IMG/VR virus record: IMGVR_UViG_3300035070_002626
Coordinates: 124,001 to 188,000 of that record
DNA: 64,000 bases
Strand: one strand, 5' to 3'
Shown here: positions 19,555 to 29,864 of the stretch, piece after piece
Position numbering within the stretch: the stretch's first letter is position 1
How the letters are laid out: each line of letters begins with the position of its first letter
Translations under genes and position numbers: made by a program
Notes under the pieces: generated by a model
What the model was told of the DNA's origin: nothing
The model's input: the letters and a program-made list of their open reading frames with translations, nothing else
Database searches by the model: none

Positions 19555-19860
19555 TTAACTTTCGGGCTCGATTTTAACTTGCAACGGATATCCATTAGCA
19601 CGGGCAAGTAGAGTAACTTCAATTCCTTTTTGTTCAGCCATTTCGTACGGCATAACTGCTACCACAGCTGATCCCGTTTCGTGCACGTTGAGTGTTAAAT
19701 TTTCCGCAGTTGCTTCGGTATAATTGAAAATATCAACTAGTGTGTGGATAACAAACTCATGTGAAGTTTGGTTGTCGTTAATGTAGATCAACTTAAACAA
19801 CGTTGGTTCTTTAAGAAAAATGTTTGTTTGCACTTTATTTTTTGTTTCGGTTTGGCTCAT
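19555..19860 (-). CDS. clpS: ATP-dependent Clp protease adaptor ClpS
   Basis: EP..FKLIYIND..T..EFV..L..IF, VHETGSAVV, AEQK, GYPLQVKIE. Confidence 0.92.
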   Translation of the reverse strand: MSQTETKNKVQTNIFLKEPTLFKLIYINDNQTSHEFVIHTLVDIFNYTEATAENLTLNVHETGSAVVAVMPYEMAEQKGIEVTLLARANGYPLQVKIEPES

Positions 19861-19937
19861 AACAATCCTTATTCTTTTATAGTGTATGCAGAGCAATAGC
19901 CACTCTGCATACTATTTTTATATACTTATCTTAGGAG

Positions 19938-20381
19938 TTAGGTTTCAACTGTTATGTCGATAACTTTTGGCTTCATTACTTCTGGAATAAGTCGCTCAAG
20001 GTCAATCTTGAGAATTCCATCTTTCAATGTTGCTGCTTTAACTTCTACGTAGTCTGCTAAGTTGAATGTGCGTACAAAAGGTCTAGTACTAATGCCCTTG
20101 TGCAGGAATTCACACTCATCGTCAGAATCTGTTTTTCCTGTAACTGTTAGTACCCCTTCTTTCAGCTCAACATTGATGTCCGCCATTTGAAAACCAGCTA
20201 CTGCCAGTCTGATGCGATAAGTTTCTTCTCCTGTGCGAAGAATATCATATGGGGGATAATTTTGCACAGCACCATTGGCTGTTGCTCTGTCAATGTTGTT
20301 AGTGATACGATCAAAAAGTTGATCAAATCCAACTGCGTTGCGATAAAATGGGGTGAGGTCTAGTGAGGTAAGTCTTGTCAT
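19938..20381 (-). CDS. Small heat shock protein Hsp20 (IbpA-like)
   Basis: VGFDQLFD, NYPPYDI, LAVAGF, FLHKGIS.R.F.R.F.L, GILKIDL, PE..KP..I. Confidence 0.95.
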   Translation of the reverse strand: MTRLTSLDLTPFYRNAVGFDQLFDRITNNIDRATANGAVQNYPPYDILRTGEETYRIRLAVAGFQMADINVELKEGVLTVTGKTDSDDECEFLHKGISTRPFVRTFNLADYVEVKAATLKDGILKIDLERLIPEVMKPKVIDITVET

Positions 20382-20442
20382 TTTGTTTCTCCTTTATAAA
20401 AGCAAGATTTAAAATTGTAGGTCCTGTTTAGCAACCTACAAT
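20382..20442 (-). ncRNA. ROSE-like RNA thermometer in the hsp20 5'UTR
   Basis: AUCUUGCU-UUUAUA-AAGGAGA hairpin occludes the SD; preceded by an AUUGUAGGU/ACCUACAAU hairpin. Confidence 0.7.
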
Positions 20443-20444
20443 AT

Positions 20445-20475
20445 TATTTATACACGATACAACCAACAATGTCAA
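20445..20475 (-). promoter_or_regulatory. Composite early/late promoter of hsp20
   Basis: TTGACA-N17-TATAAA in which the -10 box is also TATAAATA. Confidence 0.7.
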
Positions 20476-20484
20476 TATATCAAT

Positions 20485-22872
20485 TTACCATTTAATGCTA
20501 TATGATACTTCGGCTACGTTATTGCCTGTTTGGCTCATTGCTGCACCTAGTGTTATGTCGCCATTGTTGTATGCAGTAGTGTATTCAATTCTAGCATATG
20601 CATTTATATCTGATGGCATACCAAATTGTTGCTGTGTGTACTGTGTTGTTCCGTTGCTGTCAATACTAGTAGGAATACTTGTGCTAACGTTACCGCTGAG
20701 TGCAACTGGGTGTATACCTGCAAACGCTTGTAACCCACCGTCAGTATAGCTTGCTTCGGCCCACACTCCTGTTTGTGTCGAAACATTTGTAACCAATCCA
20801 GGTGTGATGTCTGTGCTCACATGCATTACGCTACCTGTGAATGCAAACTTGTCTTTAGCATAACTTGCAACGTTGTCGATAACTGTGCTACTCTTAACAT
20901 CGCCCCAAACCCCATTAAAATCTAACCAAGGATTGTTTTTCATATTTGTTGCATAGACACTGTAATCAAAGTTACCTACACTATACATACTATGCCCAAG
21001 TGATATTTCATTGGAATCAAGATTGAATCTAATTGTTGTATCGCTGTTTCCAAACGATACACTGCCATTATTTTGTAATGTGTTGTACATTGTGGTATTA
21101 CTGTTTACTGTAGATTGACTTAGATCAACTGTATAGCCTCGACCAATGGTGTCAGTTGCTACGCCGGATACTTCGCCAATGTTTAGTCCAGTGATGTTGC
21201 CACTTAGTGACGATCCGTTTAGTGACAATCCTCCCAATGGATTAAATGCCGATTTGATGTCGATGATATTGCCGCCTGCATATGTTGTGCCACTGGCTAT
21301 TAGTGCTTGTGTTGCATCGGCATCACTTAAATAATTCCACTCATCTTGCAACATGCTTTTAGCTGTGCCTGCTGCAATGGTTGATCCATCTATTTGGCTC
21401 ATAAACACAGCCATTTGTCTATCTGATCCGTTCATAAATGGTATGTATGTTACAAGATAATCATTACCATCGTCGCCTTTAAACACATTAACTGTGTTAC
21501 CACTACTGTTAGCACTACCACCATATGTATTTGTTGAATCAGTGATAAAATTTGTTAATGTGTTCTGATGTGCAGCAACATATTTGTTGTCTGATGTTTT
21601 AATCAAGAACTGATGGCTGTCATTAGCTCCACCAAAGTCTCCGCCAGACACTAGAATATCTTCTTTTCCGTCGCCATTAATATCGAAAAATTTGGGCTGG
21701 TATGTACTGTGACTGTTAGTGTTATATCCACTTAGAATGCTACTCGTAACATCGCTAAAGTCCCCAGTGCCGTTGTTTTGTAAAAACTGTATGTCACTAA
21801 ATTCTCGGAACACATCTGATGAACGAGCAAACACCATAACATCGTCGATGTTATCTTCGTTGAAATCGTAGTTAACTACACGCACCTGGTGATCAGTTCC
21901 AGTTACATTTGAACTTGCTGGCAAGTCTTTAACAAATGTGTATTCTACAACAGCTTCACCCTCTCGCGCATCCCAACCTTGCGGATTAGTAAAATCTACA
22001 CTGTACATCTTGGTTAAATTAGCACTGCTACATCCAGCTACGTTAAGATACGACAATGGGCAAGAAGCATCAGTTATAATGATTTCGTTGTTGCCGCCAT
22101 CTCCTAAGAAATTACCAATAGTTACACCTGAACCACCACTGCGAAGATGTCCGCTGTTATTCCATGGATCTATATATGTAGTAAACCCATCAATTGTATT
22201 GTTAAGAGCAATTGTTGTGTTTGGTCCATAATCTGTCATGATAATATCATCGTATGTGTCGTTGTTCAAGTCGCCGACATCACTATCATGTGACCATATA
22301 CCTACAGTGGGAATTGAAATTTTGGCAAAATTACTACCGTCATTACGAAATACATTTGCTGGACCATACACAACATTGTTATCGGTGCTGTGGCTTACAA
22401 ACATGTCATTTCGGCCTGTCTTAAAAAAGTCTGTAAACTCAATATCAGGCTCAGTGCCTAAGATTATATTATCATCACCGGAAAACCATTGAGATGTTTT
22501 ATCAACCAAACTGCCGTTTTCAAAACTCATTATGTTTATTCGACTGCTCACCCAATTGTTATAATCATTTGTTGCTGTCTGTCTACCAGCAAACACAATA
22601 TCGTCACTAGCTCCGTCTCCATCCAAATCGCTGATGTAGGAGTCGTATACAGAATATACACTAGTAGCACCGCCTGCTAGTGGATCAATGGTTCCTTGGT
22701 ATGTTGGAAGAGCATACAACCAAGCAATTGGACTAGGCGAAGGACTGCCCGGATTACTAGGAGTTGCCCCTGCTTGTGTTGCAGGCTGTCCGCCTCCACC
22801 TCCACCACCACATGCACTAAGAGCAGTGGTTGCTAGCAGGGCTGCTACAAGTTTAGGTCTTGCGTGTTGCAT
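20485..22872 (-). CDS. Lipoprotein with FG-GAP/VCBS repeats and a probable C-terminal beta-barrel (autotransporter-like)
   Basis: Lipobox LSAC followed by poly-G; DLDGDG..DIV, GDLNND..DII, DFNED..DVM, DINGDG.EDILV repeats; ends VSYSIKW. Confidence 0.75.
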   Translation of the reverse strand: MQHARPKLVAALLATTALSACGGGGGGGQPATQAGATPSNPGSPSPSPIAWLYALPTYQGTIDPLAGGATSVYSVYDSYISDLDGDGASDDIVFAGRQTATNDYNNWVSSRINIMSFENGSLVDKTSQWFSGDDNIILGTEPDIEFTDFFKTGRNDMFVSHSTDNNVVYGPANVFRNDGSNFAKISIPTVGIWSHDSDVGDLNNDTYDDIIMTDYGPNTTIALNNTIDGFTTYIDPWNNSGHLRSGGSGVTIGNFLGDGGNNEIIITDASCPLSYLNVAGCSSANLTKMYSVDFTNPQGWDAREGEAVVEYTFVKDLPASSNVTGTDHQVRVVNYDFNEDNIDDVMVFARSSDVFREFSDIQFLQNNGTGDFSDVTSSILSGYNTNSHSTYQPKFFDINGDGKEDILVSGGDFGGANDSHQFLIKTSDNKYVAAHQNTLTNFITDSTNTYGGSANSSGNTVNVFKGDDGNDYLVTYIPFMNGSDRQMAVFMSQIDGSTIAAGTAKSMLQDEWNYLSDADATQALIASGTTYAGGNIIDIKSAFNPLGGLSLNGSSLSGNITGLNIGEVSGVATDTIGRGYTVDLSQSTVNSNTTMYNTLQNNGSVSFGNSDTTIRFNLDSNEISLGHSMYSVGNFDYSVYATNMKNNPWLDFNGVWGDVKSSTVIDNVASYAKDKFAFTGSVMHVSTDITPGLVTNVSTQTGVWAEASYTDGGLQAFAGIHPVALSGNVSTSIPTSIDSNGTTQYTQQQFGMPSDINAYARIEYTTAYNNGDITLGAAMSQTGNNVAEVSYSIKW

Positions 22873-22899
22873 TAATGTCTCTCCTTAACTATTACATTA

Positions 22900-22927
22900 A
22901 GTATAACATCTCGTGCAGCAAAGTCAA
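22900..22927 (-). promoter_or_regulatory. Sigma70-type promoter of the lipoprotein gene
   Basis: TTGACT-N16-TATACT with extended TG. Confidence 0.65.
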
Positions 22928-22940
22928 CCGTTTTCTAGTG

Positions 22941-24152
22941 TTAGGCTGCTATTTTTTGTGGATTGTTTACTAACTCGGGTGTAATTTCAACTTGAGTTAT
23001 TTTACTGTTAGCATACTCTTTAAGACTGTACATATGCGGCATTAGAATTCTTTCCAATTCAGCTTGCAAACTACGTGCACCTGTTTTGCGTTTATGTGCA
23101 TGTTGTGCAATCTCACGCAATGCATCTACACTAAATGTTAATGCAACACCATCAGTTTCAAACAAGTATGTGTATTGTGCTACTAAACTGTTGCGTATCT
23201 CTGTGAGTACATATACTAGCTGATCTTCGGTTAATTGCTCAAGAGCTACATTGGTCGGAAAACGTCCTACAAATTCCGGAATTAATCCAAATTTTACCAG
23301 ATCGTCGGGCTCAATATCTCCTAGGCTACCAGGTGTGTTGTCTTTGATTGTAACACCAAAGCCGATACCCGAGTCAGACGATGCTCTACGTTTTACTACA
23401 TCTTCGAGTCCAACAAACGCTCCGCCTGCAATAAACAATATATTTTTAGTGTCTATTTCGATCATTTCCGCTTGTGGGTTTTTCCTACCGACATTGCCAG
23501 CTGGTACACGACAAATTGTGCCTTCTACTAGTTTAAGCAATGCTTGCTGCACACCTTCGCCACTAACATCGCGAGTGATCGACGAACTTTCACTTTTACG
23601 TGATATCTTGTCAACTTCGTCTAAAAACACAATACCTCTTTGTGCTTTTTCAACATCCCCGTCTGCTGAGTTTAGCAACTTACCGATTAATGTTTCGACA
23701 TCGTCCCCAACATACCCAGCTTCGGTAATAGAAGTTGCATCCGCAATTGCAAATGGCACATCTAAAAATCGTGCTACACTTTTTGCTAACAATGTCTTAC
23801 CGCAGCCCGTTGGCCCAAGCAATAGTATATTGGCTTTGTCTAATTCTATCTCTGTTGATGTATTATTAATTCTTTTGTAATGATTAGCAACTGCTACCGA
23901 AAGCACAACTTTTGCCATTTCTTGACCAATCACGTATTTGTCAAGGAATTCTTTTAGCTCGACAGGGTCTATGTCATTGACATTATTTGCATGTACTGTA
24001 TTACTTGCTAGCTCTTGTAGTAAGTCTCCACATAGATCCACACATTCATTGCAGATAGCAACATTGTCGCCAACTATGAGCTTTGTTACACTGTTTTTAT
24101 CCTTATTACAAAAATTACATTTTTCGTATGCTAACATGGTATCCTCGGTCAT
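22941..24152 (-). CDS. clpX: ATP-dependent Clp protease ATP-binding subunit ClpX
   Basis: CNFC...CNEC zinc finger, GPTGCGKT, AGYVG, FLDEVDK, RDVSGEGVQQALLK, IGF loop, TGARSL. Confidence 0.96.
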   Translation of the reverse strand: MTEDTMLAYEKCNFCNKDKNSVTKLIVGDNVAICNECVDLCGDLLQELASNTVHANNVNDIDPVELKEFLDKYVIGQEMAKVVLSVAVANHYKRINNTSTEIELDKANILLLGPTGCGKTLLAKSVARFLDVPFAIADATSITEAGYVGDDVETLIGKLLNSADGDVEKAQRGIVFLDEVDKISRKSESSSITRDVSGEGVQQALLKLVEGTICRVPAGNVGRKNPQAEMIEIDTKNILFIAGGAFVGLEDVVKRRASSDSGIGFGVTIKDNTPGSLGDIEPDDLVKFGLIPEFVGRFPTNVALEQLTEDQLVYVLTEIRNSLVAQYTYLFETDGVALTFSVDALREIAQHAHKRKTGARSLQAELERILMPHMYSLKEYANSKITQVEITPELVNNPQKIAA

Positions 24153-26939
24153 TTAAATTCCCTGGTCTCTAAGTTGCTGTTCAAGTTGACTGCGTTCTAC
24201 GTCATTTAATAATTCTGGATCATATTCGCCAGAACCAAGTTTTTCAATCAAGTGCTTAATATATTCATCATTGTATGCGTATGTGTCTGAATTGTTTTTG
24301 TCAATTTCAATCCAGGTAGTGCCGTTCCATTTAAATACTTTAGTCGGGAGATAGTCAACCCTAATGTAAATATCGCCCTTGACTGCTCTGTCAGGAAACA
24401 CTGTACCAAATTCCACTGTGGTGTAGTTTGTTTCAATTTCATTGTCACTTAGTTCTAAGTACTGTGCCCAAGGTAATACGTCTATTTGTTTCTGAGAAAA
24501 TTTTTGTTCTTGCTCTTTAAGTGTTAAATCTGGATTAAGTCGTTTCCAGATACGTTTAGCCTGTTTTTCATCGTCATCGCCCTCAACTACTATAATGTCA
24601 TCAGTTCTTTCATCCTCATAGTCGGCTGCTTTATATCCTGCTATAGCCTCGTCTGGCAGAGGAGGTGGAGTGGGTAGTTCAAATTCTATTGTAGGCGGAA
24701 CATTATCAGCAACCAATTGGGCTCTTGCTGCTTCATAATCTTTGCGTTCTTCTTCTGCTAATTCGTCTGCGCTCACATCTTCAAATTTAAGTTCAACTTC
24801 TTCTTCCTTGTACTCAGGAAAAACAATGCGCTCAACGTGAACTGCTATTTTTTTAGGAGATTGATCAAGCGAATCACCTTCGTCTCTATTCTCTCCAGTC
24901 TCTCCTCTAACTGATTCAATTTGTACTGCAGAGTTGCCGCTGTGGGAGGTTTCTTTTGTATCTTTTTGCGATTCATCTTTTCTTTGAATTTTGATACTAT
25001 CTTCTGGCACGGTATTAGCCGTTTGTATTTCTTCATTTGCGGTGTTTTCCTTGGGTATTTCGTTGACAACTGGCAATGCAGTCAACCTGTCTTTTTGTCT
25101 CCAGCTAAAAGTTTCTGTTGCAGCTAACAACATCATAATTGCAAGTGGATCGAATACAAAAACAATTAAGATAATAACCCATCTAACAGCAGATTCTAAC
25201 ACATTACTATTAGTGTCCTCGCCGTAGATTAATTGTGCAATATACTTGATTGGTCCTACTTCTGCTTCTAGTTTGCGAACTTCAGATTCAAGTGCAAACT
25301 TGTTTTCAATTATAAAATCAATTTCACTGTTTGCAACTCTAATACGTTCTTGTTGTTCATCAATTAATGTGTCAAGATCAACATCATCGCCTACTTGTAT
25401 TTGCGCTCTTAAACGTTCAATAACAGCTTGGCTGTTTGCAATCTCTTCTTCTGCTACTGCACGTATTCTAGAAATCTCTGCTCTGGCAATTTCAATTCTA
25501 GGGTCTTCTTTATTGCGCAGTTCAGTGATGGTGTCCTGTGCTGTTTTACGTGCTACTCGATTGTCGGGAATCTCCACATTCAACACATTGTCAATTTTTT
25601 CTTGAATACTACTACGTTGAGATTCTAATCCAGCAACTGCATCTGTCCGTATACGGTCAATGGTGTCTAGCAATGCTTGCTTGCGCTGTTGTACGCTTTC
25701 GATTTGTGAGCCACGTATGTTGTTTACTAATTTAGTTAAACGATCACGTTCTGCTTCTACATTTGCCTGAGCAGCATTGCGTATTTCACTTGATTGTTCT
25801 TGCAAATTGTTGATAAGCTCGCTTAAACGTTCACGCTCTGTTGCTACTACTGTCTGTGCTTGCTCTTTGAAAGATGTTTCTTGTCCTTGAAGTTCGGCAA
25901 TACGAGAACGTTGAGACTCTACCCAAGATGCTAACGCTCTGCGTGTGTTACCGCCAAACAAGCCGTCACTGGTTACGCCGATAACTGCCTGACCTTCTTG
26001 TATTTTAGCACGTTCTGTACTTTGTAATTTGTTTGTAACTAATATTATTTGTTGTTCAACTGCGCTAATTTGTTCTTGCAGTGTATTTACAGCACTATAG
26101 TCAGGTGTCAGTTCAGCAATGCGAGTTTCTAATACAGAAATTTGTTCTTTTAAAGTTGATAATGCACTCAAATCTGGTACTAGTTTACCGATACGTGCTT
26201 CATAGTCTACTACTTGGTTGTTAAGTGTTGCTAAGTCTACATCTAGTTGTGTAATTTGCTCTAGGTAAGGTTGTATTTGTTGTTCAACACTTGCAACACT
26301 AGCACCTTCCAGTGAATTTCTAAAGTTACTAACTACATTGTTTAGTCGTGATAGTTCTGTATCTAAACTAATAATTTCATCTTCGTATACTGCTACACGA
26401 TTTAATAGTGTGTTTTCCTGTGCTGTAATAATAGCTTGTTGTTCGTCAATACTAGGTTGACGTCTAGTATATGCGCTGTTAATACGTTCCTGTTCTCTAT
26501 CAATCTTAGATTGAATGCCTAAATCTTGTTTGTCAGCATCAGTTTCGCCTTTGGCAATACGTGCTTCTGCTCTGGCAATAATGTCTTGTTGACGAATTAT
26601 TTCTTCGTCCATACGCACAAGTTGTGCCGCCTGTTCTTCTGCTGCACTGGTTTGTTCGATGTGTGCTTTGCTTAAAAAACCAAAAATGCCCATGCTTGTA
26701 ATAAACATAAGAACAAGGACAGCAGGTACCATATAAAATTTCATTATATAGCTAGCACGTTGCCAATTCTGGTGTAACCATACCGTAACTGTAAGTTTTG
26801 CAACCTCTAACACACTTCCCATCACAACAATAGGAATAATAGCAGATGCAAAGATTGCAGCCAAGCCGACGATACTGTAATAAGCAGCAATAGCACTTAA
26901 ACTAAGTGCAACGAAGAGAACTAAGAGAGCCATAAACAT
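24153..26939 (-). CDS. Membrane-anchored long coiled-coil protein with a central peptidoglycan-binding motif
   Basis: 3 N-terminal TMs, ~480 aa coiled coil, GVTSDGLFGGNTRRAL, EVGPIKYIA, TM ending VFDPLA, acidic tail. Confidence 0.75.
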   Translation of the reverse strand: MFMALLVLFVALSLSAIAAYYSIVGLAAIFASAIIPIVVMGSVLEVAKLTVTVWLHQNWQRASYIMKFYMVPAVLVLMFITSMGIFGFLSKAHIEQTSAAEEQAAQLVRMDEEIIRQQDIIARAEARIAKGETDADKQDLGIQSKIDREQERINSAYTRRQPSIDEQQAIITAQENTLLNRVAVYEDEIISLDTELSRLNNVVSNFRNSLEGASVASVEQQIQPYLEQITQLDVDLATLNNQVVDYEARIGKLVPDLSALSTLKEQISVLETRIAELTPDYSAVNTLQEQISAVEQQIILVTNKLQSTERAKIQEGQAVIGVTSDGLFGGNTRRALASWVESQRSRIAELQGQETSFKEQAQTVVATERERLSELINNLQEQSSEIRNAAQANVEAERDRLTKLVNNIRGSQIESVQQRKQALLDTIDRIRTDAVAGLESQRSSIQEKIDNVLNVEIPDNRVARKTAQDTITELRNKEDPRIEIARAEISRIRAVAEEEIANSQAVIERLRAQIQVGDDVDLDTLIDEQQERIRVANSEIDFIIENKFALESEVRKLEAEVGPIKYIAQLIYGEDTNSNVLESAVRWVIILIVFVFDPLAIMMLLAATETFSWRQKDRLTALPVVNEIPKENTANEEIQTANTVPEDSIKIQRKDESQKDTKETSHSGNSAVQIESVRGETGENRDEGDSLDQSPKKIAVHVERIVFPEYKEEEVELKFEDVSADELAEEERKDYEAARAQLVADNVPPTIEFELPTPPPLPDEAIAGYKAADYEDERTDDIIVVEGDDDEKQAKRIWKRLNPDLTLKEQEQKFSQKQIDVLPWAQYLELSDNEIETNYTTVEFGTVFPDRAVKGDIYIRVDYLPTKVFKWNGTTWIEIDKNNSDTYAYNDEYIKHLIEKLGSGEYDPELLNDVERSQLEQQLRDQGI

Positions 26940-26980: not shown

Positions 26981-27262
26981 CTATGTCTTTGTAAAGTATC
27001 GTTGATATATGTTTTCCAATCCTGCTTTATCTGGGTGTTTTCTTATCCACATACCAGTTGCTGGATCAAAATGTTTTTTAAAAAAGTTGTCCATTTTACG
27101 ATTGCCTGTGGCCACGCTGGTATCAACTGCATAAGACATTTCGTCAAACAACGCATCAGACATAATCGAATCATTCTTGTACTCGTATGCATACGCTGCA
27201 ACTGATAATCTTATGCGCCGTCTAATCTCAGCTTCTACTGTAGATCGATCAATCTGTTGCAT
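26981..27262 (-). CDS. Stand-alone NAD-dependent DNA ligase domain Ia-like protein
   Basis: AYAYEYKNDSIMSDALFD matches Y..Y....P.iSD..YD of LigA domain Ia. Confidence 0.65.
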   Translation of the reverse strand: MQQIDRSTVEAEIRRRIRLSVAAYAYEYKNDSIMSDALFDEMSYAVDTSVATGNRKMDNFFKKHFDPATGMWIRKHPDKAGLENIYQRYFTKT

Positions 27263-27389
27263 CGGCAACATTTGTAGCAATAGTATGTACTACGTGCTGA
27301 CTTGTATCTACTATATCTGTTATTGACGCACCTGTGTATAAACTATACCCAATAATGCCGCATACAACAAAAATTGCTGGTTTAATCAT
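27249..27389 (-). CDS. Small membrane protein
   Basis: MIKPAIFVVCGIIGYSLY...; sits behind a promoter and AAGGA RBS. Confidence 0.6.
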   Translation of the reverse strand: MIKPAIFVVCGIIGYSLYTGASITDIVDTSQHVVHTIATNVADATD

Positions 27390-27416
27390 AGTGATGATCC
27401 TTTTAAAACACAATAC

Positions 27417-27445
27417 AATATAACATTTATGTGTATTAATGTCAA
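27417..27445 (-). promoter_or_regulatory. Sigma70-type promoter
   Basis: TTGACA-N17-TATATT. Confidence 0.65.
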
Positions 27446-27448
27446 CCA

Positions 27449-29545
27449 CTATTTTACAATTATAGCACTTGCTTCGGCTTCGGTATATTGTGACGAACTG
27501 AGTGCACCCGGATTAGGCGGAGGTGTTAGATCTAGTGCGCCGTCTTGTTGCAAATGTGCCGCATCTAAGTTGTCGGTGTTGCGTGATTCTCTCATTGCTG
27601 CAATTGCAGCTTGCCCGCCAAGTGAATCAATGTTCATTATTCTTTCGAGGTACTCACTTGCGCCGCCGCTGGATGTATCTAATGCATACACTGGCAGACT
27701 GCTACTTAATGATATAGCATTGTTTTCACTTGGCACCAACGCCGAAACTGTCATATCCATTTTTGCACGAATTAACTTTTCTCGTGCTAATTGTTCTTGT
27801 ACACGCTTGAAATTTGCTTGTACCGTTTGTGCTGTTGTATTACCAGAATAAACACTTTGCATAAGTGACACAGCGGCAGTAATAACGGCTGTGTATGCAT
27901 CAGCAAATGAACTATACGTTCCAGCGCCATATACTCCTACTGGTATAACCCAATTTGGTCCACTAACATATGTGCCGTCTATTAAGTATTCAAGAACAAC
28001 CAACACTCCGGTAGTAGCACTGCTTGAACCATCGTCCTTGTAAAATACATCAAGATCACCGTTGGCGTTCATTGTGGTTAATAAGTCGTAATTTTGTTGC
28101 AACGGTGCTGCGCTATTATAACCCGCAGCATACCCAATACAGTCAGCAATTGTAAAATTAGCACTTGGCCCGGTTGCAAGTTGTATATTGCTTTGCACTC
28201 CGTAGTAGTCTTGCCAATACCCAGCAACACCTGCTGGCACATAAGTTGTTAAATTTTGTATGTCAGGTAAATCTTTCATAGTTTCAAGATTACTAGCAGC
28301 ATTAGTAAATGTAGCAATGCCTGATGCTTCAATGCCTTTAATCTGTCCTAGGCTCAACGACAATGCACCATTGGCAACTGCTATGTTGTCTGGAACCATT
28401 CCGCTCAACCTAGCGCCTAAATCATTAAACATAGGATTAACACTTCCGCCACTATCTACATAGATGGCCCTGGTACCAAGTTTGCCTGTGCGTACCGGTG
28501 CTGTTAATGTCTGAAAACTTGTTGGAAACAGTTTTGTAGGATCAAACAAATCACTACCAGCGACAACAGATGCTTGGGTGCATTGTAGGATAGCTTTAAC
28601 TTGAGATACATCAGCTATTGACAATGTTGCAAATGCTATATAGATTTGCTCTTGAATACCCTGTGGTAAGCCTGCACCAACTCTAGCAAGATTGTTTAAA
28701 TCAAGTCCAAGACTGCCTAACAATATGTTTGTTGTTGGAACTGGGCTTGCACCTAGTGTTGCAGCAAGCCTTGGGTTTAGTACTACTTTAGATAACTGTG
28801 CGTACATAGGTCCTAATGTACCTGCGTCCAGCATGTTGCTCAACATCTGCCCTGGGCTTCCCAAGTTTGGCAATGCTGCAAAGTTAATAACTGTACCAAG
28901 CAATGCACAATCAGCACCAAATGCTGTGCCAGCTAAATTGACTCCGCTTAGTGCACCACTTGCAACATTGTCCATTCCGGCAAACGTGCCGCCTGTAAAA
29001 GCATTTGCACTATTGTTAGCAGCATTAATGTATTGGTTGCTGTTTTGCACAAAAGAAATTGAACCAGTTAATGCTGTGGCAAACTTTCTAGCATCGCCTT
29101 CGATTTCACTGCCGTTGATTGCACCGCCTAGTACACTAGCACTTTCGGTGCGACCAAATGTTAACACACTATCAACACTATCGTCGGTGTGCATTACTGT
29201 ATACGCATTGCCGGAGTATAAATCAAAAGGTGCTGAAAACACGTTGTCGCCGAGGCCATTGGTCATACTACTAAATTCGTTTATATATGTATTGGCTAGG
29301 TTTGCCACCTTGGCTGTTACATCATACAATACGCTCTGAATGCTTTGTATTTGTACAGTGTAGTAATTCATACTATACAAAGTTGGATTGCCAGTTAAAC
29401 CTGTTGTACTATCAACTAAGTTTAACGTTACCCCGGCGTTACTAGCTATCGGCTTAGCACCAATAGTTGGATCACTGCCGTTAGCAAGCATACTCGCACC
29501 TGCTGTTAATGTCATTGAGGTAACTGTCATATCACATTGCGCCAA
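27449..29545 (-). CDS. Putative virion structural protein (baseplate/tail associated)
   Basis: 698 aa, A/G/S/T/N-rich, overlaps the PAAR gene. Confidence 0.6.
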   Translation of the reverse strand: MAQCDMTVTSMTLTAGASMLANGSDPTIGAKPIASNAGVTLNLVDSTTGLTGNPTLYSMNYYTVQIQSIQSVLYDVTAKVANLANTYINEFSSMTNGLGDNVFSAPFDLYSGNAYTVMHTDDSVDSVLTFGRTESASVLGGAINGSEIEGDARKFATALTGSISFVQNSNQYINAANNSANAFTGGTFAGMDNVASGALSGVNLAGTAFGADCALLGTVINFAALPNLGSPGQMLSNMLDAGTLGPMYAQLSKVVLNPRLAATLGASPVPTTNILLGSLGLDLNNLARVGAGLPQGIQEQIYIAFATLSIADVSQVKAILQCTQASVVAGSDLFDPTKLFPTSFQTLTAPVRTGKLGTRAIYVDSGGSVNPMFNDLGARLSGMVPDNIAVANGALSLSLGQIKGIEASGIATFTNAASNLETMKDLPDIQNLTTYVPAGVAGYWQDYYGVQSNIQLATGPSANFTIADCIGYAAGYNSAAPLQQNYDLLTTMNANGDLDVFYKDDGSSSATTGVLVVLEYLIDGTYVSGPNWVIPVGVYGAGTYSSFADAYTAVITAAVSLMQSVYSGNTTAQTVQANFKRVQEQLAREKLIRAKMDMTVSALVPSENNAISLSSSLPVYALDTSSGGASEYLERIMNIDSLGGQAAIAAMRESRNTDNLDAAHLQQDGALDLTPPPNPGALSSSQYTEAEASAIIVK

Positions 29546-29825
29546 TTATTACATCTGGACTACCCTGTGTACGAATATCAAAACACGTATCGATATTGCC
29601 AACAAAATTAATTGTTTGAAATTCTGCTAAAACACTGGGTGAGCCTAGTGAGGTTTTTGCAACACAATGTTTAGCACAAGGGCCAGGACCGCAGCATGGA
29701 TGCGGACTAACTGGTGTAAATTCAAGACACGCTGGTTGACCATTGATTAGTACACTCAGTGCACCTGGTCCTGTTGCAATGCCTCCCATGCTGTTTGCGT
29801 CACCTATTCTTACTGCCTGTGGCAT
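29532..29825 (-). CDS. PAAR-type spike tip protein (T4 gp5.4-like)
   Basis: QAVRIGD, SVLINGQPA, H..C, GSPSV, GSPDVIIG. Confidence 0.85.
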   Translation of the reverse strand: MPQAVRIGDANSMGGIATGPGALSVLINGQPACLEFTPVSPHPCCGPGPCAKHCVAKTSLGSPSVLAEFQTINFVGNIDTCFDIRTQGSPDVIIGAM

Positions 29826-29864
29826 ATTCATCCTCACTATTACAACAGTATTTATGGTGACTTT

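What the first reader, a model, noticed from the sequence alone, without database searches (positions are those of the whole stretch)
24153..26939. Periplasm-spanning coiled-coil hairpin with a peptidoglycan-binding tip and symmetric arm duplications
Seen: TMs on both sides of a ~480-aa coiled coil, with GVTSDGLFGGNTRRAL (PG_binding_1-like DGxFGxxT) near its midpoint (~25922-25980). There is a tandem repeat just before it (RIGKLVPDLSALSTLKEQIS / RIAELTPDYSAVNTLQEQIS) and another just after (QAQTVVATERERLSELINNL / AAQANVEAERDRLTKLVNNI). Inference: both arms of an antiparallel hairpin were lengthened together, like a molecular ruler reaching the cell wall. It may act in lysis control, in envelope anchoring of assembly, or with the adjacent ClpX via the acidic cytoplasmic tail.
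Basis: partly seen in the sequence, partly recalled or inferred. Interest (0 to 1): 0.6.

Follow-up and report, generated by a model that had tools for sequence, protein, structure and literature searches.

The report
Phage membrane hairpin touching the cell wall
A jumbo phage encodes an inner-membrane protein that probably pushes a roughly 35-nm two-stranded helical hairpin into the periplasm, with a cell-wall-binding-type motif at its tip; it belongs to a very large, undescribed family whose two arms always change length together, and whose biological role is still unknown.

Summary
ORF 24153-26939(-) encodes 928 aa: three N-terminal TM helices, about 480 helical residues, a fourth TM, an acidic linker and a folded C-terminal domain.

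- **Fold:** AlphaFold2 (pLDDT 84.6) and structure alignments give an intramolecular antiparallel hairpin that turns at residue ~325, exactly at the DG..G..T motif.
- **Tip:** the window's own tip is below Pfam thresholds. Family-wide, 66 of 93 tips hit PG_binding_3 and 55 of 93 hit PG_binding_1, and a tip profile finds only peptidoglycan-binding domains in the PDB. It is one half-repeat, not a full domain.
- **Repeats:** both tandem repeats are real (periods 24 and 29 aa) and lie opposite each other across the hairpin.
- **Arm lengths:** in 239 tip-bearing relatives the arms run from 113 to 236 aa but differ from each other by only 0-17 aa (r = 0.996). No one-arm variant was seen.
- **Origin of the long tip:** this gene is a mosaic. 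Its long tip segment resembles another lineage, so both repeats probably arrived together by recombination.
- **Family:** 4,150 clusters, almost all from large phages, plus a short tip-less branch in Bdellovibrionales.

Function is not established. ClpX or a cell-wall hydrolase is a frequent neighbour. My best guess is a wall-to-membrane tether acting in envelope or lysis control.

The parts
24153..26939 (-). Whole gene, 928 aa (P0001)
   Evidence: Single open frame. Full-length relatives of 660-930 aa are numerous in metagenomes.
26664..26939 (-). Membrane module, aa 1-92: three TM helices. It is the most conserved part, with invariant F30, M40, K48, W54, W59, M78, S82, G84, G87, L89, S90.
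   Evidence: Hydropathy and AF2 helices 2-24, 34-57, 64-83; invariant columns in 150 sequences. The TM2-TM3 loop has net charge +2.3, indicating the cytoplasmic side.
25980..26663 (-). Ascending arm of the hairpin, aa 93-320
   Evidence: AF2 helices 85-138, 140-212, 216-252, 258-276, 282-305, 310-320. Hydrophobic period is 3.4-3.55.
26520..26534 (-). Hinge on arm 1, aa 136-140 (pLDDT below 50)
   Evidence: It is mirrored by the break at aa 514-519. Gly131/141 and Gly517 lie at -194/-184 and +192 from D325. The hinge coincides with the edge of the part kept in the short-loop relatives.
26124..26195 (-). 24-aa block, aa 249-272: first copy of repeat 1, absent from the 212/207 class
   Evidence: Self-match at offset 24. 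Deleted in P0009, P0037 and others.
25905..26012 (-). Tip helix-loop-helix, aa 310-345, with Q317, G321, D325, G326, G329, T332. It is one PG_binding_1/3-type repeat unit.
   Evidence: Q, D, G, G, T are invariant in 93 tips. 66/93 hit PG_binding_3 (best E 1.7e-5) and 55/93 hit PG_binding_1 (best E 4e-7). The PDB profile hits are all peptidoglycan-binding domains: 7dnp 2.4e-5, 1lbu, 4lpq, 3bkh, 6tci.
25755..25841 (-). 29-aa block, aa 367-395, of repeat 2, absent from the 212/207 class. It lies opposite the 24-aa block.
   Evidence: Self-match at offset 29; paired deletion in relatives. Distances from D325 are 53-76 on arm 1 and 42-70 on arm 2.
25260..25952 (-). Descending arm, aa 330-560
   Evidence: AF2 helices 330-476, 480-512, 520-560. 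Hydrophobic period is 3.65, with power 3.0 against a shuffled maximum of 1.44.
25383..25400 (-). Hinge on arm 2, aa 514-519 (pLDDT below 50)
25620..26219 (-). Tip segment, aa ~241-440, of different ancestry from the rest of the gene
   Evidence: Identity to P0009 is 90-100% outside this stretch but 38-72% inside it, where P0019 is closer at 70-85%.
25077..25259 (-). Interfacial helix (EVGPIKY) and TM4, aa 561-621, with invariant G562, P563, F596, D597, P598, A600
   Evidence: The region before TM4 has net charge -1.8.
24570..25034 (-). Acidic, probably disordered cytoplasmic linker, aa 636-790
   Evidence: 45 D+E against 17 K+R in 155 aa. pLDDT is below 50 from aa 628. Length and sequence vary between relatives.
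24156..24623 (-). Folded C-terminal domain, aa 773-928: helices, a four-stranded sheet, then helices
   Evidence: AF2 pLDDT 89.6, pTM 0.75. Present in 50 of 151 representatives across all arm-length classes. It matches the C-terminal part of phrog_11591 'virion structural protein' at E 1e-7. No solved analogue was found.
22941..24152 (-). ClpX homologue; it starts on the base next to the target's stop codon
   Evidence: phrog_4339 E 6e-102; coordinates. A ClpX gene lies 1-3 genes downstream in 31 of 75 related loci, and also in Salicola phage SCTP-2.

Best explanation
The gene encodes a phage inner-membrane protein with four TM helices.

**Shown or strongly supported.** The ~480 residues between TM3 and TM4 form an intramolecular antiparallel coiled-coil hairpin. 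Each arm has 236 aa, about 35 nm if straight, with a hinge about 45 residues above the membrane. The turn is a helix-loop-helix homologous to one repeat unit of PG_binding_1/PG_binding_3. The hairpin can only be lengthened or shortened by matched blocks on both arms. Because the distal part of a hairpin is one contiguous piece of sequence, a single recombination can swap a longer or shorter tip, and that is how this gene got its two repeats.

**Inferred.** The hairpin projects into the periplasm. The tip contacts peptidoglycan, so the protein ties the cell wall to a strongly conserved membrane module (E45, K48 and D597 lie inside the bilayer) and, through an acidic linker, to a cytoplasmic domain related to part of a virion structural protein.

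**Best guess at the role.** It acts as a wall-to-membrane tether or strut used by large phages to control or sense the state of the host envelope, such as lysis timing or envelope integrity. Arm length would be matched to the envelope geometry of the host.

The confidence given (0.55) is for the architecture plus wall contact taken together. The hairpin architecture alone I put at about 0.85, and the envelope or lysis role alone at about 0.3.
For: Hairpin:
- AF2 on a 150-sequence alignment gives pLDDT 84.6, all helical.
- The top Foldseek hits are Rad50, SMC arms, dynein stalks, chemoreceptors and PrgA.
- VIA alignments to single-chain hairpins cover model ranges symmetric about residue ~325: 139-514 (2ch7, Z 10.4), 210-437 (3g67), 178-474 (5xg2), 214-431 (5gox).

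Paired arms:
- There are 34 distinct arm-length pairs in 239 proteins, r = 0.996. Arms range 113-236 and 106-236 aa, and differ by 0-17 aa.
- Indels are nested and mirrored about the tip: 249-272/367-395, 202-241/431-474, 201-302/364-479 and 151-311/351-529.
- Arm class changes at least 21 times on the membrane-module tree.

Tip.

Topology: positive-inside charge pattern, plus a periplasmic-type motif at the tip.

Mosaic origin.

Envelope or lysis context:
- A Hydrolase_2 gene lies within 8 kb in 24 of 75 loci, including all 13 with loops of 300 aa or more.
- A glucosaminidase sits directly upstream in Pelagibacter phage Mosig.
- A GH19 chitinase and a holin lie 5-6 genes upstream in Flavobacterium phage immuto.
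Against: - No experiment bears on any of this.
- The window's own tip is sub-threshold in Pfam, and it is only half of a PG_binding_1 domain.
- About a third of relatives, including every cultured-phage homologue and the Bdellovibrionales branch, lack the tip motif. Wall binding therefore cannot be the family's core function.
- A 31-35 nm rod is longer than the usual membrane-to-wall distance (my own knowledge, not measured here).
- In this genome the only Hydrolase_2 gene is 41 kb away.
- In XacN1, RsoM2USA and SCTP-2 the neighbours are replication genes or ClpX.
- Gene-neighbourhood counts come from related phages and are not independent.
Confidence: 0.55

Rival explanations
1. It is a ClpX-linked membrane factor. 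The protein would recruit the phage ClpX to the membrane, or be its timed substrate, through the cytoplasmic tail. The hairpin would only fix it in place.
For: - ClpX starts at the base next to the target's stop codon.
- ClpX lies 1-3 genes downstream in 31 of 75 related loci.
- The order target-ClpX-ClpS recurs in the distant Salicola phage SCTP-2, which shares ~34% identity over the N-terminus only.
- Presence of the C-terminal domain co-occurs with ClpX adjacency: counts 20/8/11/36, odds ratio ~8.
Against: - Tails are highly variable.
- 44 of 75 loci, XacN1, Mosig and immuto have no adjacent ClpX.
- The co-occurrence is confounded by shared ancestry.
- The complex prediction gave no answer, which counts neither for nor against.
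Confidence: 0.15
2. It is a membrane anchor for virion assembly. The cytoplasmic C-terminal domain would bind a neck- or tail-proximal virion part and hold assembly at a wall-fixed site.
For: - The C-terminal domain matches phrog_11591 'virion structural protein'.
- A paralogue of the domain ends a 441-aa phrog_11591 protein encoded directly upstream of a tail-sheath / sheath-stabiliser-like gene in the same genome.
- BFVD gives a PA5oct structural protein at E 1.6e-3.
- The domain is present in about a third of the family, across all arm classes.
Against: - Two thirds of relatives carry other tails.
- The similarity covers only ~50-70 residues.
- No partner has been identified.
Confidence: 0.15
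3. The tip motif is only a structural turn. The helix-loop-helix would be borrowed or convergent and would not bind peptidoglycan. The hairpin would then act as a spacer, an oligomerisation rod, or a binder of a protein partner.
For: - There is only one repeat unit, where PG_binding_1 has two.
- The window's own match is sub-threshold.
- Some relatives of similar arm length have unrelated tips.
Against: - Q, D, G, G and T are invariant across tips that are otherwise 12-30% identical.
- Every significant PDB hit is a peptidoglycan-binding domain.
- The motif is absent from the short hairpins with ~50-aa arms. From general knowledge of periplasm width, such arms would probably be too short to reach the wall.
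Confidence: 0.15
4. The topology is reversed. The coiled coil would be cytoplasmic, like SMC or EzrA, and the tail periplasmic.
For: Only the fold resemblance to cytoplasmic hairpins such as SMC, Rad50 and chemoreceptors.
Against: - The TM2-TM3 loop has net charge +2.3.
- The flanks of the hairpin are net negative.
- The tip carries a motif known from extracytoplasmic wall-binding domains.
- There is no ATPase head.
Confidence: 0.05
5. It is a virion-borne ejection or tape-measure-like protein that inserts into the host envelope at infection.
For: - It is a long helical protein with hydrophobic segments and a wall-directed motif.
- The tail domain is shared with structural proteins.
Against: - Mirrored paired indels fit a hairpin, not an extended tape measure.
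- The four-TM module is the most conserved part and also occurs as a chromosomal, non-phage gene in Bdellovibrionales.
- The gene lies among replication, nucleotide-metabolism and proteostasis genes.
Confidence: 0.05

Closest known systems
PG_binding_1 (PF01471) and PG_binding_3 (PF09374) peptidoglycan-binding domains
   Same: The tip carries the pattern Q-x3-G-x3-D-G-x2-G-x2-T followed by a helix. Profile and member-level matches are significant.
   Different: There is one repeat unit, where PG_binding_1 has two. It forms the turn of a coiled-coil hairpin rather than part of a three-helix bundle attached to an enzyme. The window's own sequence is below the gathering threshold.
Antiparallel coiled-coil hairpins with a working tip: Rad50 hook, SMC hinge arms, dynein stalk, chemoreceptor signalling domain
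   Same: The fold is the same, with an elbow-like hinge, and the functional element sits at the turn. Arms must stay matched in length.
   Different: This one is predicted to be periplasmic. Both ends enter the membrane, and there is no ATPase or kinase-control module.
Phage i-spanin (Rz type)
   Same: It is phage-encoded, anchored in the inner membrane, has a periplasmic coiled coil, and lies near wall hydrolase genes in several relatives.
   Different: It has 3+1 TM helices, so both ends are anchored. No outer-membrane lipoprotein partner was found beside it. It has a wall-type tip and a long cytoplasmic tail.
Periplasmic alpha-hairpins of membrane fusion proteins (HlyD/AcrA/EmrA) and the EnvC / RipC-type coiled-coil hairpins
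   Same: These are periplasmic helical hairpins of variable length that reach a partner in the envelope. Cg1735 appears among the structural hits, with model range 220-429.
   Different: No lipoyl, beta-barrel or peptidase domain was detected. No Pfam match to those families.
Inner-membrane wall contacts and envelope rulers: MotB, TolR, TolA, ExeA(GspA), Lpp
   Same: The design idea is the same: a membrane anchor plus a reach to the cell wall, with length that matters. This comparison is from my own knowledge.
   Different: No sequence or domain relationship was detected.
Tetraspanin topology
   Same: Four TM helices with the large loop between TM3 and TM4. Weak recurrent Pfam matches at E 8e-4 to 0.2.
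   Different: All matches are below the cut-off and are probably compositional. There is no cysteine-rich loop.

Membership tests
PG_binding_1 / PG_binding_3 | Match to the family HMM above the curated cut-off | tested here: not met
   For P0001, PG_binding_3 gives E 0.1-0.14 and 13 bits against a cut-off of 24.6; there is no PG_binding_1 hit. Across the family, 66 and 55 of 93 tips match at E<=1, with best values 1.7e-5 and 4e-7.
PG_binding_1 / PG_binding_3 | Conserved D-G-x-x-G-x-x-T loop between two helices | tested here: met
   D325, G326, G329 and T332 are invariant in 93 tips. AF2 gives helix 310-320, loop 321-329, helix from 330. The PDB profile aligns it to the same loop in 7dnp, 1lbu and 4lpq.
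PG_binding_1 | Two tandem repeat units forming a three-helix bundle | tested here: not met
   Only one unit is present. In 1lbu and 4lpq the tip profile aligns separately to both of their units.
PG_binding_1 / PG_binding_3 | Binds peptidoglycan | not testable with these tools
   Needs a sacculus pull-down or muropeptide binding assay.
i-spanin | Single N-terminal TM with a free periplasmic C-terminus | tested here: not met
   Three N-terminal TM helices and a fourth after the hairpin.
i-spanin | Adjacent, overlapping or embedded outer-membrane lipoprotein (o-spanin) gene | tested here: not met
   The direct neighbours are a 99-aa Nlig-Ia protein and ClpX. The lipoprotein two genes downstream is 795 aa with FG-GAP repeats, which is unlike an o-spanin.
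i-spanin | Position in a lysis cassette | tested here: inconclusive
   Not so in this genome, where Hydrolase_2 is 41 kb away. It does hold, or nearly, in Mosig, immuto and 24 of 75 related loci.
SMC / Rad50-type proteins | ABC-type ATPase head halves at both ends of the hairpin | tested here: not met
   No such domains were found by Pfam or NCBIfam. The ends are TM helices.
Membrane fusion protein (HlyD family) | Lipoyl and beta-barrel domains flanking the hairpin | tested here: not met
   The model is all helical, and there are no Pfam hits.
Tail tape measure protein | Extended helical protein in the tail gene block whose length scales with the tail | tested here: not met
   Indels are mirrored, as expected for a hairpin. 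The gene sits among metabolism and proteostasis genes. Virion presence was not tested.

The most novel reading that the evidence does not exclude
This is a new class of phage envelope device: a length-adjustable periplasmic strut that mechanically couples the host cell wall to a conserved four-helix membrane module and a cytoplasmic domain resembling a virion protein. Large phages would use it to read or set envelope state, for example to time lysis, to sense wall damage by superinfecting phages, or to fix assembly or ClpX at wall-anchored sites. Tip segments would be swapped by recombination to fit different host envelopes.
Probability: 0.25. Interest if true: 0.85.

Novelty: new variant of a known kind. 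Interest (0 to 1): 0.65.

Why it matters
The family is very large: 4,150 clusters at 50% identity, 1,163 of them at E<=1e-30. It is concentrated in phages of 140-735 kb, and no Pfam, NCBIfam, PHROG or PADLOC model describes its core.

Nature has already done the length-variation experiment. Arms come in steps of roughly 120, 170, 210 and 236 residues and are always matched. That gives a clean handle for asking what sets distances inside the Gram-negative envelope and how phages exploit them.

If the tip binds the wall, this would be a minimal, single-repeat form of a common wall-binding domain, presented on a rigid rod. Lysis and envelope control in marine and jumbo phages are poorly understood, and this gene is a concrete candidate to test.

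Tried and rejected
- **Whole-protein family scans** (Pfam, NCBIfam, PADLOC) gave only sub-threshold coiled-coil or compositional hits: DUF3502, Tetraspanin and DUF4407 at E 0.0035 in one relative.
- **PF27984.1**, a label precomputed on some relatives, is not in the local Pfam copy, so I could not read what it is.
- **Complex prediction** of ClpX with P0001 residues 760-928 gave no answer (score 0.00). It is evidence neither way. The acidic linker itself was not included.
- **C-terminal domain fold searches:** nothing in PDB by Foldseek (best E 0.8) or by VIA wide (best Z 4.0). The Atlas returned only unnamed viral clusters.
- **T4-type late promoter** TATAAATA: 5 matches in the window against 5.9 expected, none upstream of the gene.
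- **Literature:** no paper found on this architecture, and the DUF4407 papers were irrelevant. The main text of the XacN1 paper does not mention ORF242; its supplements were not read.
- **Two homologue contig look-ups** were too short or had no DNA.
- **** was a script that returned nothing and was rerun.
Full report
**Setting.** The window is bases 124001-188000 of a 299,910-bp virus record that is 86% complete by CheckV, so it is a jumbo phage. The gene lies on the minus strand among ribonucleotide reductase, glutaredoxin, a PAAR protein, helicases, and a ClpX / Hsp20 / ClpS group.

**The observation.** ORF 24153-26939(-) is intact and encodes 928 aa. Hydropathy and AlphaFold2 give three helices in aa 1-92 and one at ~579-621, with ~480 helical residues between them. 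It lies 236 residues from the landmark at the end of TM3 and 236 from the landmark before TM4.

Both tandem repeats are real:
- Offset 24 aa: 21/43 identical, score 97.
- Offset 29 aa: 18/58 identical, score 72.
- Shuffled sequence gave a maximum of 41.6 +/- 5.9, largest 58.
- At DNA level the copies are 58% and 54% identical, well above shuffles. They are old and about equally diverged.

**It is an antiparallel hairpin.** AlphaFold2 on a 150-sequence alignment gives an all-helical model with mean pLDDT 84.6. Confidence drops only at aa 136-140 and 514-519. Foldseek's best matches are Rad50, SMC, MukB and JetC arms, dynein stalks, chemoreceptor signalling domains and PrgA.

VIA alignments to single-chain hairpins cover model ranges that are symmetric about residue ~325: 139-514 (2ch7, Z 10.4), 210-437 (3g67), 178-474 (5xg2), 214-431 (5gox) and 147-508 (5nug). 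Residues equidistant from the DG motif therefore pair. The hydrophobic period is 3.4-3.55 on arm 1 and 3.65 on arm 2. I could not read the model's coordinates, so this is indirect evidence.

**The arms co-vary.** This evidence is independent of AlphaFold.
- The exhaustive search found 4,150 clusters at 50% identity with E<=1e-3, and 1,163 with E<=1e-30.
- Among 346 family proteins in hand, 239 carry the tip motif. They show 34 distinct arm-length pairs.
- Arm 1 ranges 113-236 aa and arm 2 ranges 106-236 aa. The difference stays between 0 and 17, and r = 0.996.
- The main classes are about 124/117, 172/163, 212/207 and 236/236.
- Relative to the window protein, the missing blocks in shorter relatives are paired and nested about the tip: 249-272 with 367-395, 202-241 with 431-474, 201-302 with 364-479, and 151-311 with 351-529.
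- On a tree of the membrane module alone, arm class changes at least 21 times. The pairing therefore does not stem from one ancestral event.
- No relative with only one arm changed was seen.

**How this gene got its repeats.** Its closest relatives (84% identity, same tail) are in the 212/207 class and lack both repeats. In 40-residue windows, identity to one of them (P0009) is 90-100% over aa 1-240, 88-100% over 441-600 and 80% over 601-640. It falls to 38-72% in aa 241-440, where a 236/236-class protein with a different tail (P0019) is closer at 70-85%.

The simplest reading is that one recombination replaced the distal hairpin, tip and both repeats together. This works because the far end of a hairpin is one contiguous stretch of sequence.

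**The tip.**
- The window's own tip is sub-threshold in Pfam.
- Across 93 tips that are otherwise 12-30% identical to it, Q317, D325, G326, G329 and T332 are invariant.
- 66 tips hit PG_binding_3 (best E 1.7e-5) and 55 hit PG_binding_1 (best E 4e-7).
- A profile of the tips finds, in the PDB, essentially only peptidoglycan-binding domains (15 of 16 hits, and every one at E below 0.1). Examples are 7dnp (2.4e-5), 1lbu, 4lpq, 4nso, 7rum, the phiKZ gp144 transglycosylase, SleB and YcbB.
- In 1lbu and 4lpq the profile aligns to each of their two internal repeats.

The tip is therefore a single repeat unit, that is, half a PG_binding_1 domain. Whether one unit binds the wall, or two tips must pair, is not known.

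**Topology.** Across 150 sequences the TM2-TM3 loop has net charge +2.3. The stretches after TM3 and before TM4 are net negative, at -0.7 and -1.8. Together with the wall-type tip, this puts the hairpin in the periplasm and the N-terminus and tail in the cytoplasm. No dedicated topology predictor was available.

**Geometry.** A straight coiled coil of 120, 170, 210 or 236 residues is about 18, 25, 31 or 35 nm. From general knowledge, the longer classes exceed the usual distance from inner membrane to wall. The predicted hinge, at mirrored glycines, coincides with the boundary of the ~50-residue hairpin kept in the shortest relatives. The long arms thus look like an extension grafted beyond an ancestral short hairpin, and they may tilt.

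**Membrane module and tail.** The TM module is the most conserved part. Invariant residues include K48, W54, W59, S82, G84, G87 and S90 in the N-terminal module and G562, P563, F596, D597, P598 and A600 around TM4.

The tail is acidic (45 D+E against 17 K+R over aa 636-790) and modular. The last ~155 residues fold confidently (pLDDT 89.6) and occur in 50 of 151 representatives across all arm classes. This domain has no solved analogue. It matches the C-terminal part of phrog_11591 'virion structural protein'. A paralogue of it ends a 441-aa protein encoded next to a tail-sheath-stabiliser-like gene at about 223-225 kb in this genome.

**Distribution.**
- Only 15 of 50,697 phage records carry the family, all with genomes of 141-735 kb.
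- All cultured members have short loops and no tip motif: XacN1, Xoo-sp13, RsoM2USA, CM1/RAS14, SCTP-2, Mosig, immuto and Mel-JY01. The loops of XacN1, RsoM2USA, SCTP-2, Mosig, immuto and Mel-JY01 were read through; those of Xoo-sp13 and CM1/RAS14 were not.
- The Atlas clusters are 94-100% viral.
- There is nevertheless a cellular branch. A 261-aa homologue sits in non-phage chromosomal context in Bdellovibrio. It was found in 29 of 151 sampled genomes of that order. Another is in Polynucleobacter.

**Neighbours.**
- In 75 related viral loci, ClpX lies 1-3 genes downstream in 31.
- A Hydrolase_2 wall hydrolase lies within 8 kb in 24, including all 13 with loops of 300 aa or more.
- The two patterns almost exclude each other.
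- SCTP-2 keeps the order target-ClpX-ClpS.
- Mosig has a glucosaminidase directly upstream.
- Immuto has a chitinase and a holin 5-6 genes upstream.
- In this genome ClpX is adjacent and the hydrolase is 41 kb away.

These counts come from related phages and are only suggestive.

**Verdict.** The architecture is well supported. The periplasmic location and the wall contact are reasonable inferences. The biological role is open, and I favour envelope or lysis control over a ClpX link or an assembly anchor. The family is undescribed in the libraries and papers I could search.

Noticed in passing
L133:5001-5786 (Bdellovibrio sp. HCB274 chromosome); L118:5004-6035 (Polynucleobacter alcilacus): A cellular branch of this otherwise viral family. 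It is a 261-aa protein with the same four-TM core and a short tip-less hairpin, in non-phage context (PutA, rhomboid, RDD, S41 peptidase). A 268-aa membrane protein follows it, its start codon overlapping the homologue's stop. It was found in 29 of 151 sampled genomes of that order.
   Followed up: partly
window 20485-22872 (-): A phage-encoded 795-aa protein with a lipoprotein signal (LSAC lipobox, then a glycine run) and FG-GAP repeats, two genes downstream of the target. It has no PHROG or PADLOC match. It may be another envelope-directed protein.
   Followed up: partly
window 19555-24152 (-): A proteostasis gene group in a phage: ClpX (22941-24152, with zinc finger and a GIGFG loop), Hsp20 (19938-20381) and ClpS (19555-19896). 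No search for ClpP or ClpA in the genome was made.
   Followed up: partly
window 26981-27280 (-): A stand-alone 99-aa protein matching only the N-terminal Ia domain of NAD-dependent DNA ligase (Nlig-Ia, E 2.7e-14), directly upstream of the target.
   Followed up: no
window 27249-27449 (-) and 27449-29545 (-): A 66-aa protein with one hydrophobic helix, and a 698-aa Ala/Gly/Ser-rich protein with no family match. The 698-aa gene sits immediately downstream of (and overlaps) a PAAR-like gene (29532-29837), and the 66-aa gene follows it. The PAAR plus large-protein pair is syntenic in a related phage (L005).
   Followed up: no
G000:C1:~223272-225947 (L004:472-3146), outside the window: A 441-aa phrog_11591 'virion structural protein' and the next gene, which is like a tail sheath or sheath stabiliser. 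Both end in the small beta motif also found in the target's C-terminal domain.
   Followed up: partly
L005:6408-7996 and 13 related loci: In the long-armed relatives the genes just upstream are a Hydrolase_2 wall hydrolase, a Zeta-toxin/AAA_33-like kinase and a staphylococcal-nuclease homologue. Zeta toxins are known to act on a cell-wall precursor, so this could be a wall-directed gene set.
   Followed up: no
P0001 aa 330-490 (window ~25470-25952): The descending arm shows self-similarity at offsets of 22, 44 and 88 residues and a 3.65-residue hydrophobic period. This indicates 11-residue (hendecad) repeats, whereas the ascending arm is closer to heptads.
   Followed up: partly
relatives P0005, P0037 and others: Some relatives carry a precomputed label PF27984.1, and one carries PF25994.1. 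Neither could be resolved with the local Pfam copy. A recent Pfam release may already hold a model touching this family.
   Followed up: partly
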